Source of the DNA: Calcarisporiella thermophila CBS 279.70
Taxonomy: Eukaryota; Fungi; Calcarisporiellomycota
Direction: 5' to 3'
Length of the DNA: 64,000 bases
NCBI RefSeq assembly: GCF_041956535.1
Contig: NW_027192204.1
Coordinates: 193,696 to 257,695, forward strand
This document shows positions 4,826-13,343 of this stretch, in pieces; within the stretch, counting starts at the first letter, position 1; each line of letters starts with the position of its first letter. The notes below the pieces were generated by a model. The model did not search any database. It saw only the letters and a list, made by a program, of their open reading frames with translations, and was not told where the DNA came from. The position numbers were made by a program, and so were the translations under genes.

Positions 4826-6484
4826 TTAAAGTCCAGCATAATTCCTTCTCTTTCTCCTAGCCTTTACAGCCGCATCTCCCTTTTTCTTGTTCTCCAGCTT
4901 CTTAGCCTCCTTAGTCTTGTTTTCTGCTACCTCTTTCTGATCACTCGAAGGCTCGGCTGAGTCTTTTTCCTCCTGTGAGTCCTCCCCTGCTACAATGGCT
5001 TTTAGAGCTGAGCTAAAATTGCAGCTGGAAGGTTTAGCACCATGGATCCCTTGGATAGAGTCCAGGAGTTCGAATTTTCCGTTGTAGTAGTCATTTGAGA
5101 TATCCCACACCATCACTCCACCCAAGCCTTTGCATAGTGCGTAGTTGACTTTGTTTTGGAGAGAGACCGGGTCGTCGTATGAAATGTAGACTTTGGTCTG
5201 AGAGAAAAGCACATCATATAAGTTGTAGAAACGCAAGTATGTCCTAACTATATTCAAAAGCCATCGGAAATCTTCACATTACCTGCTTGTTAAAGAGCCA
5301 GGGAGTCTTGGTTTTCTGATCAAAGCACCGAATATAATTGGCGTCCCCAGCAGTGGTGGGCGTGGCAAGAACACCTTGGGAACGAAGATTCTTCCATTTC
5401 CAAATGCCTGAAACACCTCCGGGCTCCTTACCACAAAAAGGATCTTGCCAGTATGCATCCTCGTTATCTCCTTTGGGCGCACCTGTCTTAGCGGGCACAT
5501 ACTGGTTATCACATGTCATGTCCTGTAGTGCTTGGATAGAACGTCCGTAGAAGGGAAGGCCGGCGTTGATCTTCGCGGGTGGGACTCCTGCGGCGGTCCA
5601 ATCATGAATTCCTTGCGTATATGAGAATGGAGCTAAAGGAATATGATGACCTACAGATGAGTGGAGAGCATAGAAATGAGCCTAGCGCTACTTCTCACCG
5701 GCTTTTCCGGGCTCAAAGTCGAAGGGAGCATGATGACCAGTAATGGGCGCCCACGCGCCATTGATATCATAGGCCATGATGTTAAACATATCGACGACTT
5801 TTGCGTACTGGGACACGTCTTTCATTGGCCCATTGGGGCCATCGAAGGGTTGAACCCGGACGGCCATAGTAATATCCTTTCTCTTGTCGGGGAATTCGGT
5901 GTCGAGGGCTTTGCGCAGCTCCTGAAGTAGGACCAAGAAGTTCTTCGAGTCATTTTCTTTATCCACTTCGTTGCATGCCGCGCCCTCTCTACCGGGATAT
6001 TCCCAATCAATGTCCACGCCATCTGTGCCATATCTTCCCAGAAAAAAGAGCGTATTATCAGCTAGTCAGCGAAGGATGGTAGGAACACAGAGAGCTGAGA
6101 GACAGCTTACTTTTTGATAAAATTGATATTCCAATCAATAAATTTCTTGCGAGATTGCGCCGACTTCACCATGGGACTGAATTTGATGCAGCCGGTCCAG
6201 CCGCCAATGGAGAGATACACTTTGGTGTTGGCAGCGTGAGCTTTCTGTACTATGCTGGGAAGTTTGCTTTCGACCGCCCAGTCATCCGTGAAATAGGGCG
6301 TGTAGTCGTCTTTGTTTAGCACTGCAAAAGCATAGTTGATGTGCGTGTATTTGTCGTATGGGATCTGCTCGATAGGGAATTTGGCATAAAGCCAGTTCGG
6401 GAAATACCCAACGATGTTTCGTTTGGCCTGAGCCTGTGCGGCCAGTGCCACGACTGCGGTCGCCAGCAGGGTGAAGTACTTCAT
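4826..6484 (-). CDS. Secreted GH18 chitinase, 4 exons, charged K/E-rich C-terminal tail
   Basis: Signal peptide MKYFTLLATAVVALAAQAQA; SIGGW motif; catalytic DGVDIDWEYP; MAYD; LGGVMVW. Confidence 0.95.
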
Positions 6485-10136: not shown

Positions 10137-11619
10137 CTGGCGCAAATTAAATTAGCAAATTAGAGATAAAAAGGATGCTTTATATCAATTATCCTGGAAT
10201 TTATAAGTGAGAAGTGACAATAACCGGTGAAGTGTATTTATGATTCCGTGCTAATCTCAAAAGTCCAAAGGATGAGAGAAAAAACAGGCCAGGTCTGTTC
10301 TTTCAAAATTCTCTATCGGCAATGTCTTGGCCTACCAATTTGAATCTAAACAATTTTAGGCCAAATTTCACCTAGCTATTTGCTCTTTCTTTATTCAAAC
10401 TATTCCCCATAAATCATAGAAAAATCAGAGATTGCTCAAGACTGATTTATCTACATGATAGTAGATTAGTTTCTATTTAGTTTTCCTAATAGTGTTTTGA
10501 ATCTCGTGGTTTATATAACGCATTGAATATTATCGGGATACAGTTGACCAAAGATACACTGTACATTTCATTGGCTCGCCTCTTCGTTGGAGAGATTATT
10601 AATAGAGATGTAGGAAGCCAGTATGACTATATAAATTATGTAAAAATACAAATTGGATATTCAACTTCCTACTCTGCTCCCCTTCTCTTTCGTTGTCTAC
10701 TTTGGTTATAGAAGCCCACGCGAATAATCTGAAATGGGACGGACTAGGGTGGAAACTATATTAAGGTTATGAGAGCACGCCTACAAATCAGGGATGCAAT
10801 GGATATGAGGCTGTACTAACTAGGAGAAAAAGAGGCAATAAAAAGCTAGCCCTAGAAAACGTGGATAAATACTTATTTTACAAATGTCGAGGAGATATTC
10901 AATAACGCGCAATTCAAAAGGAGGGAAGGCTAAATAGCACTAGGGTGAGACCCATGCTGAAGAAAAATCCACTGGTAGAAAGCAACTGTCAAGATTAAAT
11001 TTGATCAAAAGTATATCATTGCCATCCCTACGAAGTAATGAAGCATAAGCACACGCAATTCTAAGATTCGAAAATACAATATGTATCAATTGGAACGCTT
11101 TAATTCGTGATTCTGATAAATGTAATAAGACAATAAAATAAAAACTGTATTCTTATGAGAAAGAGTGTAGAAAATAGAAAACTTTTATTTTTTTTATCTT
11201 TTATTTATTTTATTATTTTTTGAATTGTGGACCTTCTATTGAGAAATAAAATAAATGCGTATCATCTAAAATAGCCTAGATTTTGCACCTGGTCTAGCTT
11301 AAAAGAGATAAAAGTAAATAGAAAGTAAATTTTGTTTTCCTATTCGGGCGGGAGTATTTTTTGACTTATTTAATATATATTTTTACAAGGGAAGAACGAC
11401 AACTCAAGTTATGGAGTACAGAAAATCAAAGGCAAGAAGCAAAGGGATCCAACCTTGATATGGTTGGTTCAGGCATTCTCTGTTTCTTCAAAGTAGACGC
11501 TAGAATTTATTTTTTTTTTTTGGGAGGGAGGAGGAAGTTTATTAAAAAGTATTCACTTTAGTTGCATGGTGAGAAGGACGAATGCTCATACAGACGAAAA
11601 AAAAATGATCCAGACTAGG

Positions 11620-11788
11620 TTTTTTTTCCAACTTCAATCTTCGGTGTTTCGTTACTTGTTGTTGCTCTCACTCATTTCCTGAACAGAAGTAGTAGCTGTC
11701 GCCAGTGCGGAAGATGGTGTGAACAGTGTTGCAGTTGCCGCTGCAGCATTGTGCGCCAAAGATGCAGCGGTAGAGGGCGGGAAGGCAA
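11620..11788 (-). pseudogene. 5'-truncated retrocopy of a cystine-knot (knottin/ICK) peptide mRNA
   Basis: 11787-11668 reads CLPALYRCIFGAQCCSGNCNTVHTIFRTGDSYYFCSGNE* (C-x6-C-x5-CC-x3-C-x15-C). A short UTR and A8 follow, and repeat copies lie on both sides. There is no start codon or signal peptide. Confidence 0.65.
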
Positions 11789-11802
11789 GGATCCAAACTA
11801 GA

Positions 11803-12140
11803 TTTTTTTTTGATCAATCAATGGAAACTTTTATTTAATGTCCATATATTACATGAAGTTAATGTCAATGGACTTAACATAACGAGGTATAGGCCCTTGA
11901 TCGATAGACTTTCAATCGATATGCGTGTATCGTAGTTGTCGTGAATAGCATGTACGTGAAACCGATGTAATCTTTTGTACTTATCGTAAGGGCGATCTTT
12001 TCAATAATCAAGACTCAGCTTCTGATCAAGTGGATTGCAGCCACAAACTAAGAGTAAGTGCTGGTGGGGGAAGTGGGATTCGAACCCACGCCGTTCTCAT
12101 CGGCATCCCAGGGATAGTCCACTACACTAACCCTCCCCCA
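11803..12140 (-). mobile_element. tRNA-derived SINE (about 338 bp) with poly(A) tail and 14-bp target-site duplication
   Basis: tRNA-like head with A box TAGTGTAGTGG and B box GGTTCGAATCC; about 250-nt body; AATAAA (11835-11830); A9 (11811-11803). Flanked by identical TCTAGTTTGGATCC at 12154-12141 and 11802-11789. Confidence 0.85.
12062..12139 (-). ncRNA. tRNA-like head of the SINE (not a functional tRNA; anticodon loop collapsed)
   Basis: Acceptor stem GGGGGAG/TTCCCCC followed by A-CCA; T arm GTGGG-TTCGAAT-CCCAC; variable-arm-like GCCG-ATGAGAA-CGGC; anticodon arm reduced to ATCCC-T-GGGAT. Confidence 0.75.
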
Positions 12141-12467
12141 GGATCCAAACTAGATCCAAACTAGGTCGGTAATTTGAAACTCAGCAAAGGTTTATGATTT
12201 GTCTCAATTCGAACAAAACAAAAATTTTACTATATCTCAACGGTTAAGTCTAGTGGACTTGAGGATGCATGAGATCAAACCATACCATAGTCCGATTACC
12301 AGGCGGGAGACTTTATACACTTCAGTGCTCATACCGCATAAATGGCTCGCGACTTAGAGCAAACCCAGGACAGAATCTAATGATGAGAGTCGATTTCTCC
12401 AAGACTTCATTTCTTCGCGCTCTGTCCACACTTTATACGAACGAAGTTTTGTCCCGGACGACCGATC

Positions 12468-12767
12468 CATTTTTATGCCAGCCCCTCTAAGAGAGACCTC
12501 GAAGGCGCACTTGGATGAGGTCGTTAGAGGGAAAGCTTGGTGCGTCTTCGGTTAGCTCCTGAGGGGAAGCAGTCTCGAGGTTTTCTCTAGGACAACCGAG
12601 TGAGAAGCCTTTTCTTGTGGAAATCGGATTGTACTTTGCGCCCAGGCAAGAGTTCCCTGGAGGCAAGATAATCCAATATTTATTCTACAGAGTAGTTAGC
12701 CTCTCGCAAGTCTCATCGGAATACGCCGACGATGTACTGACAAATATGCCCAACTTTAGTAAAAATG
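12468..12767 (+). ncRNA. RPR1: Nuclear RNase P RNA-like gene (or a degenerate copy), about 300 nt
   Basis: Folded by eye in the canonical order. P1 CATTTTTA/TAAAAATG; P3 CCCTCTAA..GACCTC/GAGGTC..TTAGAGGG; CR-I GGGAAAGCTTGG pairing with CCAACTTT (P4); P5 TGCG/CGCA; P7 GGTTAGCT/AGTTAGCC; L8 TGAG; P9; CR-II TGGAAA; P12 GGATTGT/ATAATCC; CR-III CAAT; AGNNNNAT (AGTCTCAT). Confidence 0.65.
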
Positions 12768-13343
12768 AAGTGTCTATCCTACCCGGTAATAGTAGTGCTG
12801 TCAACGAGGGAGCTAACTATACCGGGTATAGGTGGGCCTCATTTTCCAGTATGATTAGGATGAGCGTACATGGGAAACCACTCCAATCGAAACTGGGAAC
12901 CAAGCCCCACCCAGCCAACCTCCAATCCAGCCCTGTTGACCAGGGGTTGCCCAGAAACTTTGCCACCAAGAAAAATGCATTTTGTTATGGGCGTCCACCG
13001 TGTTTGGTGGGGTGTGGATCCACACGGAAGAGTCTGGGATGGCGCGAGGTCTCCGGATGCTGCCGGCCATCTTACACAAACTCGGGAGGGGGGGGGGGAG
13101 GCGAAACCTTGTGTGCATAGGTCGCATTTAATATAGAGATAAATAGCGAAGGAGATATGAGGGAAAATTACACTAATTAATCACACAAAATAATAAAAAT
13201 AAAAGGGGTCCTTATGCAAGGAGAGGAATAAAAGGCTTCTAAGCAGAAGAGGGGAAACATAAGAAGAAAGTGAAAGTCCTTTTAAATAGTATCGATAAAT
13301 TAAGAAAAAAAAAGTTTGGTGTATAGAGCAAGAAACAAAAAAG

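What the first reader, a model, noticed from the sequence alone, without database searches (positions are those of the whole stretch)
11264..12165. Polarised array of RNA-derived inserts stacked at one recurring 13-14 bp target site (CRISPR-like layout built by retroposition)
Seen on the minus strand, in order: CCTAGTTTGGA-TCTAGTTTGGATCC, then [SINE...AATAAA...A9], TCTAGTTTGGATCC, [knottin fragment...A8], CCTAGTCTGGATC, [3'UTR-like...AATAAA-16nt-A12], then a further copy TCAAGGTTGGATCC (11458-11445) and possibly a 9/11 relic at 11264-11274. All inserts face the same way and end in oligo(A). The repeat is perfect at the right end and progressively mutated leftwards. Established: target-primed reverse transcription by non-LTR element enzymes leaves 5'-truncated, poly(A)-ended inserts with target-site duplications, and sequence-specific elements regenerate their site and can stack. 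Inference: a sequence-specific RT/endonuclease acting in trans keeps re-cutting this site and writes in unrelated cellular RNAs. The result would be a chronologically ordered record of captured transcripts that grows at one end. The 11-bp tandem duplication at 12143-12164 looks like an empty insertion event. No RT gene is present in this window.
Basis: partly seen in the sequence, partly recalled or inferred. Interest (0 to 1): 0.88.

Follow-up and report, generated by a model that had tools for sequence, protein, structure and literature searches.

The report
Retroposon pile beside a tRNA-like promoter
Several RNA-derived inserts really did land one after another at the same spot in this fungal genome, probably not because an enzyme reads the 13-14 bp repeat but because this fungus's LINE/SINE machinery inserts about 84 bp upstream of tRNA-type promoters, which makes such piles a by-product of targeted jumping.

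Summary
The repeat is real: three exact copies and one 12/13 copy of (C/T)CTAGT(T/C)TGGATC lie on one strand within 560 bp. The fourth copy (11458-11445) and the relic at 11264-11274 are at chance level.

The genome is a 28 Mb fungus; the best protein match is Calcarisporiella thermophila. The 338-nt SINE has more than 40 copies with unrelated 13-19 bp target duplications. The motif is not enriched genome-wide and is never next to oligo(A) elsewhere, so a sequence-specific enzyme is refuted.

Instead, 21 of 38 SINE copies lie 77-98 bp (median 84) from the 5' end of a tRNA gene, always pointing away from it. Stacks sharing one duplication recur at other loci. Here the expected position holds a single-copy tRNA-like, SINE-head-like sequence rather than a tRNA gene.

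Reconstructed order:
- a short tail fragment of a roughly 450-nt retroposon family (insert 3);
- a 170-nt coding-type fragment with an A8 tail and a 13-bp duplication, with no parent found;
- an 11-bp empty duplication;
- the SINE.

The newest layer lies nearest the promoter.

The scan had already found this tRNA-targeting rule at three other places in this genome. The polar, time-ordered layout is supported. A CRISPR-like function is not.

The parts
12233..12301 (+). tRNA-like, SINE-head-like sequence taken as the Pol III-type promoter that is targeted. A-box-like TAAGTCTAGTGG starts at 12245. B-box-like candidates are GAGATCAAACC at 12271 and GTCCGATTACC at 12291. It points away from the stack.
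   Evidence: It aligns to SINE head positions 9-46 with none of 1000 shuffles scoring as well. A second register is seen with MAFFT, and an inverted repeat with the SINE head was found. Region 12225-12800 is single-copy. It is not called a tRNA by ARAGORN or Rfam, and its fold z-score is -0.1, so its identity as a gene is unproven.
12143..12164 (-). 11-bp tandem duplication (CTAGTTTGGAT x2) with nothing between the units. It is a candidate empty target duplication and probably formed before the SINE arrived.
   Evidence: Read directly from the sequence. The SINE's 14-bp duplication starts with the T created at the junction of the two units, so the duplication most simply predates the SINE.
12141..12154 (-). 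5' target-site duplication of the SINE, TCTAGTTTGGATCC.
   Evidence: Identical to 11789-11802.
11803..12140 (-). 338-nt tRNA-derived SINE with AATAAA and an A9 tail; the youngest layer.
   Evidence: At least 46 matches (176 candidates) at 95-98% identity in the genome. Other copies have variable target duplications.
11789..11802 (-). 3' target-site duplication of the SINE. It overlaps the 5' duplication of insert 2.
11620..11789 (-). Insert 2: a 170-nt fragment of coding type. It carries the last 42 codons of an ORF (11796-11671, stop at 11670-11668), about 40 nt of 3' UTR and an A8 tail (11627-11620). Its 13-bp duplication is CCTAGT(T/C)TGGATC.
   Evidence: In the ORF frame 27 of 42 codons end in C, against 8 of 41 in each other frame. 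GC is 49% against 27-33% in the flanks. It is unique in the genome at DNA level and protein level. No close homologue was found among 1.84 billion representative proteins.
11607..11619 (-). 3' target-site duplication of insert 2, CCTAGTCTGGATC. It matches the ancestral C-initial site at 12 of 13 positions.
   Evidence: ACCTAGTTTGGATC versus ACCTAGTCTGGATC, with none of 500 shuffles scoring as well.
11510..11606 (-). Insert 3: probably a short 5'-truncated copy of the 'family C' retroposon tail (AATAAA, 16 nt, A12). It is the oldest layer and its distal duplication was not found.
   Evidence: The tail aligns with the distal inserts of L006 and L044. Family C has at least 49 copies. An nhmmer profile of family C tails matches 11563-11515 in end register, with E 0.34 for the whole window.
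11445..11458 (-).
   Evidence: It has no A run before it and resembles the form of the repeat that exists only after the 11-bp duplication.

Best explanation
The array is a pile of independent retropositions made by a LINE/SINE system that integrates at a fixed distance (median 84 bp) upstream of Pol III-type promoters, mostly tRNA genes, with the element's 5' end facing the promoter.

The cut is placed by distance from the promoter (shown as a rule across the genome), probably through the Pol III transcription complex (inferred). After each insertion the promoter-proximal copy of the target duplication still sits at the right distance. It is cut again, the same 13-14 bp is duplicated again, and older inserts are pushed outward.

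In this window the promoter appears to be a single-copy tRNA-like, SINE-head-like sequence at about 12233-12301 on the plus strand.

Reconstructed history:
1. The original site was ...ACCGA CCTAGTTTGGATC ATTTTTTTTT...
2. A family C retroposon tail is probably an earlier layer (insert 3).
3. A 5'-truncated, A-tailed copy of a coding RNA was mobilised in trans (insert 2, 13-bp duplication).
4. An 11-bp duplication formed without an insert, possibly from an aborted event.
5. The young SINE inserted with a 14-bp duplication.

The repeat is a by-product of this process, not a recognition site, and no function of the array is implied.
For: Genome-wide rule:
- 21 of 38 SINE copies have a tRNA gene of many different anticodons 77-98 bp from the SINE 5' end (mean 84.4, sd 4.2). 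All 21 are divergent.
- SINE2 lies 85 bp from tRNA-Pro in L021. A LINE-like element lies about 85-87 bp from tRNA-Gly and tRNA-Met in L026 and L025. A SINE lies 83 bp from an inverted SINE2 head in L036, so a SINE-type promoter can also serve as the target.

Stacks elsewhere:
- A retroposon tail followed 8-38 nt later by a SINE head occurs 8 times, against 0 for the reversed control.
- The spacer equals the SINE's 3' duplication in L015, L017, L019, L021 and L022, and L017 and L021 hold three copies of it.
- Further inserts distal to the SINE share its duplication in L006, L010, L011 and L044.
- In L006, L011, L044 and this window, the more diverged families are distal and the young SINE is proximal.

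This locus:
- A SINE-head-like sequence lies in the predicted orientation.
- Its inferred start at 12233 is 93 bp from the SINE 5' end, and 82 bp from the insert 2 junction once the 11-bp duplication is removed.
- Insert 2's distal repeat matches the C-initial ancestral form, as the reconstruction predicts.

Sequence-specific targeting is excluded.

Precedent: Dictyostelium TRE5-A integrates about 50 bp upstream of tRNA genes with its 5' end facing the gene, and also upstream of an isolated B box (PMC3159450).
Against: - No accepted Pol III gene is present at this locus. ARAGORN and Rfam find nothing. The tRNA-like sequence has indels and imperfect B-box candidates, two alternative alignments and no unusual fold stability.
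- The SINE sits at 93 bp, towards the edge of the 77-98 bp range.
- Insert 2 has no detectable parent gene.
- Insert 3's match to family C is weak when judged against the whole window (E 0.34), and it has no distal duplication.
- The LINE bodies are withheld (read N). RT was therefore not seen, and the visible N-terminus gives only a sub-threshold endonuclease match (E 0.011).
- There are no sister genomes and no sequencing runs were listed, so the order of events rests on sequence logic alone.
Confidence: 0.72

Rival explanations
1. One reading: a sequence-specific RT/endonuclease recognises the 13-14 bp motif, re-cuts it and writes cellular RNAs into it, here and at other copies of the motif.
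For: The motif is repeated 4-5 times in one orientation, each time after oligo(A).
Against: About 30 other SINE copies have unrelated duplications. Outside this locus the motif occurs 3 times exactly in 28 Mb, where about 3.4 copies are expected by chance for the whole genome. With up to 1 mismatch the count is 135 against 88 for the reversed control. None of the other exact copies is next to an A/T run. Identity of the repeats follows automatically from duplicating one site again and again.
Confidence: 0.02
2. The pile is real but owes nothing to a Pol III promoter. A local hotspot is re-nicked, for example because the endonuclease likes the A-tail/duplication junction or the neighbouring T9 run, as with Alu insertions into older A-tails.
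For: No bona fide Pol III gene is detected at this locus. A T9 run directly follows the ancestral site. An A-tail plus target duplication is regenerated at each event.
Against: If the junction between an A-tail and the distal duplication were re-nicked, new elements would be added on the distal side. Here the young SINE with the perfect duplication is on the proximal side. The genome-wide rule gives a sufficient cause and predicts both the orientation and the distance seen here. No nick-site consensus is visible among the duplications.
Confidence: 0.13
3. Only the SINE inserted. Inserts 2 and 3 are native DNA, namely the last exon and 3' UTR of a small cysteine-rich protein gene, and the third repeat copy arose by chance or by an unrelated duplication.
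For: Insert 2 has an intact ORF with strong codon bias, and a YAG lies just before it. It has no parent gene elsewhere. AATAAA followed by an A run lies downstream.
Against: A 13-bp direct repeat (12/13), with the distal copy preceded by A8, brackets exactly the GC-rich segment at a known retroposition site. The 21-of-24 match including the A run had none of 500 shuffles scoring as well. No start codon or signal-peptide exon is visible upstream. No annotated protein containing the peptide turned up in the protein libraries. A genomic A12 placed 16 nt after AATAAA is a retroposition mark.
Confidence: 0.1
4. The array is a functional, CRISPR-like chronological archive of captured transcripts that the cell uses.
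For: The layout is polar and time-ordered, and one layer is not a transposon.
Against: Three of the four layers are transposon-derived or empty. Similar piles elsewhere hold only transposon pieces. There is no associated gene set, no conservation data and no transcript evidence.
Confidence: 0.01

Closest known systems
TRE5-A (DRE) and related tRNA-gene-targeted non-LTR retrotransposons of dictyostelid amoebae
   Same: Both integrate at a fixed short distance upstream of tRNA genes. [quoted passage not shown] Both mobilise non-autonomous partners in trans. TRE5-A can also use non-tRNA Pol III-type sites such as an isolated B box (PMC3159450, PMC5911963).
   Different: The host is a fungus rather than an amoebozoan. 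The distance is about 84 bp rather than about 48 bp. The passengers here are tRNA-derived SINEs with A tails. One layer in this window is a coding-RNA fragment. The autonomous element's protein domains could not be read here.
LINE-1-mediated processed pseudogenes and Alu mobilisation in mammals
   Same: Trans-mobilisation of polyadenylated RNA, 5' truncation, an A tail and a 13-bp target duplication, as seen for insert 2.
   Different: L1 has only a loose TTTT/AA preference and no tether to Pol III genes. Here the retrocopy sits at a position-specified site, and no parent gene is found.
Sequence-specific LINEs (R2, Tx1/Keno/Mutsu, Utopia) that form tandem stacks in multicopy RNA genes
   Same: Repeated head-to-tail insertion at one regenerated site.
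   Different: Those elements recognise a conserved target sequence. Here the duplications differ at every locus.
Ty3 and Ty1 LTR retrotransposons of yeast
   Same: They are fungal elements that use the Pol III machinery to find sites upstream of tRNA genes.
   Different: They are integrase-mediated LTR elements with 5-bp duplications, not target-primed reverse transcription with A tails.

Membership tests
Pol III-gene-targeted non-LTR retrotransposons (TRE5-like behaviour) | Copies lie at a narrow, fixed distance upstream of tRNA genes of many kinds. | tested here: met
   21 of 38 SINE copies lie at 77-98 bp (median 84, sd 4.2), next to tRNAs of at least 13 amino-acid types. SINE2 and the LINE-like element behave likewise.
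Pol III-gene-targeted non-LTR retrotransposons (TRE5-like behaviour) | Fixed orientation relative to the target gene. | tested here: met
   All 21 adjacent tRNA genes are divergent from the SINE.
Pol III-gene-targeted non-LTR retrotransposons (TRE5-like behaviour) | Hallmarks of target-primed reverse transcription: an A tail, variable target duplications and 5' truncation. | tested here: met
   Duplications of 13-19 bp and A7-A14 tails. Truncated copies are seen.
Pol III-gene-targeted non-LTR retrotransposons (TRE5-like behaviour) | An autonomous partner encoding an APE endonuclease and a reverse transcriptase. | tested here: inconclusive
   Elements of 3.4-4.8 kb share the SINE's tail, but their bodies are withheld as N. 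The visible 81-aa N-terminus (FIFLQETH) gives Exo_endo_phos at E 0.011, which is below the family cut-off.
Pol III-gene-targeted non-LTR retrotransposons (TRE5-like behaviour) | A Pol III-transcribed gene or promoter at the expected place at this particular locus. | tested here: inconclusive
   A SINE-head-like sequence lies at 12241-12274 in the right orientation and distance. There is no tRNA or Rfam family there, and the fold z-score is -0.1.
Pol III-gene-targeted non-LTR retrotransposons (TRE5-like behaviour) | Physical tethering to TFIIIB or TFIIIC. | not testable with these tools
   This needs protein interaction or promoter-mutation assays.
Sequence-specific (target-sequence-recognising) LINE systems | The same target sequence flanks copies across the genome. 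| tested here: not met
Processed pseudogene / retrocopy (insert 2) | An A tail, a flanking target duplication and 5' truncation of a coding RNA. | tested here: met
   An A8 tail and a 13-bp duplication at 12/13. The ORF runs to its stop but has no start codon, and 27 of 42 codons end in C.
Processed pseudogene / retrocopy (insert 2) | An identifiable parent gene elsewhere in the genome. | tested here: not met
   Only the self hit was found at DNA and protein level. There is no match to the genome's RCC1-repeat genes. Caveat: withheld stretches and unassembled DNA were not searched.
CRISPR-like adaptive array | Dedicated acquisition and use machinery, and evidence that the array is used. | tested here: not met
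   No RT or other dedicated gene was noticed in the window. The layers are mostly transposon pieces, and no RNA data were listed.

The most novel reading that the evidence does not exclude
The Pol III-tethered LINE machinery of this fungus occasionally copies non-transposon RNAs into its landing sites. Piles upstream of tRNA-type promoters would then be time-ordered archives that can preserve fragments of genes no longer present in the genome. The 42-codon cysteine-rich ORF of insert 2 would be one such orphan, derived from a lost or foreign transcript.
Probability: 0.25. Interest if true: 0.65.

Novelty: new variant of a known kind. Interest (0 to 1): 0.58.

Why it matters
Position-specific integration of non-LTR elements next to Pol III genes is listed in the reviews I could read only for social amoebae (PMC5911963, PMC5006619). 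My literature searches found no fungal case.

An early-diverging fungus with the same habit would be a clear case of convergent 'safe-haven' targeting. This one uses SINE passengers and a different spacing of about 84 bp.

This locus adds three points:
- The target need not be a tRNA gene; a tRNA-like promoter seems to be enough.
- The targeting acts on whatever RNA the enzyme has picked up, since a coding-RNA fragment landed at the same nucleotide position.
- The piles grow from the promoter side, so they can be read as a relative time series of element activity.

It also shows how a repeat-spacer look can arise with no sequence recognition and no function.

Tried and rejected
- Strain or RNA evidence: no sequencing run was listed for 11300-12450.
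- Sister-species comparison: the nearest protein relative outside the species is at 61% identity.
- RNase P RNA as the target: Rfam finds nothing in 12100-13200 even at E 10. The genome's RF00009 gene is on another contig and has no SINE upstream.
- tRNA at the target: none found by ARAGORN or Rfam.
- Structured RNA at 12236-12474: fold z-score -0.1.
- Parent of insert 2: own-genome DNA and protein searches, an HMMER scan of 1.84 billion representatives and a direct comparison with the genome's eight RCC1-repeat loci all came up blank.
- Knottin identity of the peptide: only sub-threshold Pfam hits, UPF0506 and Toxin_27. The weak RCC1-repeat likeness is not seen by the Pfam RCC1 model. Its identity is left open.
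- A duplication after the A12 of insert 3: not significant.
- Reading the LINE bodies: they are withheld as N, and I did not try to get around that.
Full report
**1. What is there**

Read on the minus strand, the locus has this order:
- ...ACCGA
- CCTAGTTTGGA (12165-12155)
- TCTAGTTTGGATCC (12154-12141)
- a 338-nt element with a tRNA-like head, AATAAA and A9 (12140-11803)
- TCTAGTTTGGATCC (11802-11789)
- a GC-richer stretch ending in A8 (to 11620)
- CCTAGTCTGGATC (11619-11607)
- AT9...AATAAA, 16 nt, A12 (11606-11510)
- 51 nt
- TCAAGGTTGGATCC (11458-11445)

A search for CTAGTTTGGATC with up to 2 mismatches finds five sites in the 64-kb window. All five are on this strand and lie between 11446 and 12164. 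The repeat finder groups the same five copies.

The first four copies are far beyond chance. Three are exact 12-mers, and the genome holds six exact copies in all. In the fourth, the match extends into the preceding A run at 21 of 24 positions, with none of 500 shuffles scoring as well.

The fifth copy has no A run before it, and its shuffle p is only about 0.01 for a 75-nt segment. The 9/11 relic at 11264-11274 is what an AT-rich kilobase gives by chance.

**2. Organism and limits**

Neighbouring ORFs encode tricalbin-type C2 domains, a concentrative nucleoside transporter, MutL and Rax2.

The transporter's best match is Calcarisporiella thermophila at 94%. The next relative is at 61%. The contig length of that hit (781,212) equals that of the window's contig C14.

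The window's genome is 28.2 Mb in 116 contigs. No sister genome can be reached and no sequencing run was listed. Strain and species comparisons and RNA evidence were therefore not available.

**3. The SINE is an ordinary multicopy SINE and is not site-specific**

The 338-nt element has at least 46 matches (176 candidates) at 95-98% identity.

In about 30 copies the flanking duplications are 13-19 bp and unrelated to one another. Examples are GTGGCTTTGGCGGCTT, GACTCGAGAGTGTAGC and ACATTCAGAAAGCGCGA.

Two of the five repeats in the window are therefore simply this SINE's own target duplication.

Genome-wide, CTAGTTTGGATC occurs six times exactly, where about 3.4 copies are expected by chance, and three of those are here. 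With one mismatch the count is 135, against 88 for the reversed control. The three other exact sites and a second CTAGTCTGGATC site have no A/T run nearby.

**4. What does place the insertions**

ARAGORN on the fetched SINE loci shows a tRNA gene next to 21 of 38 copies. The distance from the SINE 5' end to the tRNA 5' end is 77-98 bp (median 84, mean 84.4, sd 4.2). In all 21 cases the two point away from each other, and the tRNAs carry many different anticodons.

Related elements behave the same way:
- A second SINE family with the same tail (SINE2) lies 85 bp from tRNA-Pro in L021.
- A 3.4-4.8 kb element with the related tail ...AATAAAAGTCTCCGTTGATTGATC(A)n lies about 85-87 bp from tRNA-Gly in L026 and tRNA-Met in L025.
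- One SINE lies 83 bp from the head of an inverted SINE2 in L036, so a SINE-type promoter can be the target as well.

The long elements' bodies are withheld and read as N. I did not try to read them. The visible 81-residue N-terminus contains FIFLQETH and gives a sub-threshold Exo_endo_phos match (E 0.011).

[quoted passage not shown] TRE5-A also integrates upstream of an isolated B box on the rDNA element (PMC3159450).

The 2018 review lists tRNA-targeted non-LTR elements only from dictyostelids (PMC5911963). The 2016 survey says TRE-like elements were not found outside them (PMC5006619). My searches found no fungal report.

The scan's own notes show that follow-up agents reached the same rule at three other places in this genome. 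I reached it independently.

**5. Piles are the expected by-product, and they recur**

After an insertion, the copy of the duplication on the promoter side is still at the right distance and can be cut again. This gives: promoter, about 84 bp, duplication, newest element, duplication, older element, duplication.

A tail followed 8-38 nt later by a SINE head occurs eight times in the genome, against none for the reversed control. In L015, L017, L019, L021 and L022 the spacer equals the SINE's 3' duplication, and L017 and L021 show three copies of it.

Distal to the SINE, further A-tailed inserts share its duplication in L006, L010, L011 and L044. In L006, L011 and L044 the distal layer belongs to an older, more diverged family, while the young SINE is proximal. 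That is the polarity the model predicts.

**6. The target in this window**

The window holds no tRNA gene and no Rfam family at gathering score. Region 12100-13200 gives nothing relevant even at E 10.

The genome's RNase P RNA (RF00009, 102 bits) is on contig C7. The first stage's RNase P reading of 12468-12767 is therefore not supported by Rfam.

At the predicted place and orientation, however, plus-strand 12241-12274 aligns with positions 9-46 of the SINE's own head: GGTTAAGTCTAGTGGACT..TGAGGATGC..ATGAGA. None of 1000 shuffles scored as well. MAFFT offers a second register that pairs GAGATCAAACC with the SINE's B box and ACCAG with ACCAG.

An A-box-like TAAGTCTAGTGG starts at 12245. B-box-like strings start at 12271 and 12291. 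A T5 run follows at 12470-12474. The region 12225-12800 is single-copy.

Taking 12233 as position 1, the SINE's 5' end is 93 bp away. The insert 2 junction is 82 bp away once the later 11-bp duplication is removed. Both values fall inside the genome-wide range.

Whether this sequence is a working Pol III unit is not shown. It has no unusual fold stability (z -0.1).

**7. Reconstruction of the layers (inference from sequence)**

- Removing the SINE and one 14-bp copy leaves ...ACCGA C CTAGTTTGGAT CTAGTTTGGAT CC TTGCC...
- The T that begins the SINE's duplication exists only at the junction of the two 11-bp units. The 11-bp duplication therefore most simply predates the SINE.
- Removing one unit gives ...ACCGA CCTAGTTTGGATC C TTGCC..., whose C-initial 13-mer matches the third repeat CCTAGTCTGGATC at 12 of 13 positions.
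- This explains why the leftmost and third copies start with C while the two SINE copies start with T.
- Insert 2 is thus a 170-nt, A8-tailed insert with its own 13-bp duplication.
- The ancestral site read ...ACCGA CCTAGTTTGGATC ATTTTTTTTT...

**8. What the non-SINE layers are**

Insert 2:
- It has 49% GC, against 27-33% in the flanks.
- One frame reads LDPCLPALYRCIFGAQCCSGNCNTVHTIFRTGDSYYFCSGNE followed by a stop.
- In that frame 27 of 42 codons end in C, against 8 of 41 in each other frame. This is a clear coding signature.
- It has no start codon, and no upstream exon is visible.
- It is unique in the genome at DNA level and protein level.
- A full HMMER scan of 1.84 billion representative proteins finds only three weak hits, all RCC1-repeat proteins at 24-28% identity.
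- The Pfam RCC1 model does not match it, and the genome's RCC1 genes are not its parents.
- It is best read as a 5'-truncated retrocopy of a coding RNA whose source is unknown. Both the knottin and the RCC1-blade readings remain open.
- Caveat: withheld and unassembled DNA could hide a parent.

Insert 3:
- Its last 60 nt or so align with the tails of the distal inserts of L006 and L044.
- Those belong to a family of at least 49 copies at 74-96% identity.
- A profile of 15 family tails matches 11563-11515 in end register. The E-value is 0.34 for the whole window, which corresponds to about 1e-3 if scaled to the roughly 100 nt of insert 3 alone (my own scaling).
- It is probably a short transposon tail rather than an orphan cellular 3' UTR.
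- Its distal duplication was not found, so this layer is the least secure.

The 11-bp duplication has nothing between its units and lies inside the cut interval. A staggered cut that was filled in without an insert would explain it, but replication slippage cannot be excluded.

**9. Verdict**

- The polar, time-ordered stacking by target-primed reverse transcription is right.
- The proposed cause, sequence recognition, is wrong and is replaced by promoter-distance targeting.
- The CRISPR-like reading has no support.
- The system is a fungal counterpart of the amoebal TRE5 elements.
- This locus adds a non-tRNA target and a captured coding-RNA fragment.

Noticed in passing
L026 (G000:C7:1152800-1160800), 4985-5092: Between the promoter-side copy of the duplication (5076-5092) and the withheld LINE body lies a tRNA-Asn gene in the same sense as the LINE, followed by T7 and then A14. 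This may be a 5' transduction or a retroposed pre-tRNA. tRNA-Gly lies 85 bp from the stack.
   Followed up: partly
L002, L003, L038 (about 65-80 bp 5' of the SINE): SINE copies with no tRNA nearby lie next to a recurrent motif, ...TTGTAAGGARATTTGGCAYAATATGGAWTTATGGCGCAGTAG..., at the edge of withheld blocks. It contains an A-box-like or primer-binding-site-like TGGCGCAGTAG. This may be another element that the SINE targets.
   Followed up: no
L007, L032, L043 (20-45 bp 5' of the SINE): The motif GGTCTATCCYGACAATCCTCT recurs between the tRNA gene and the SINE. It is probably the end of a further element family that also lands next to tRNA genes.
   Followed up: no
G000:C7:1040035-1040348 (L048) and window 12468-12767: The genome's RNase P RNA by Rfam (RF00009, 102 bits) is on contig C7 and has no SINE upstream. 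The first stage's RNase P-like call at window 12468-12767 gets no Rfam support even at E 10.
   Followed up: partly
window 11668-11796 (-): The 42-residue ORF has cystine-knot-like spacing (C6C6CC3C17C). Its only database matches are RCC1-repeat proteins at 24-28% identity. Pfam gives only sub-threshold UPF0506 and Toxin_27 hits.
   Followed up: partly
L006:1024-1484 (-) and L061-L074: A third retroposon family ('family C') has at least 49 copies at 74-96% identity and extends further 5' than the L006 copy. Its tail reads ...GGATACTTTTCAATAAAGATCCATAAATCCC(A)n.
   Followed up: partly
window 11620-11645 (-) versus L005 SINE tail: Insert 2 ends ...GATTGAAGTTGG(A)8. This resembles the SINE tail variant ...CATTGAAGATC(A)8. 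A tail-like 3' end might have helped the enzyme pick up this RNA.
   Followed up: no
L010 (G000:C17:672770-676105): Three copies of one duplication bracket a full SINE, a 78-nt SINE tail and a LINE 3' end. The LINE-derived stretch after the duplication is repeated and a short N run interrupts it. This may be an assembly artefact or a complex stack.
   Followed up: no
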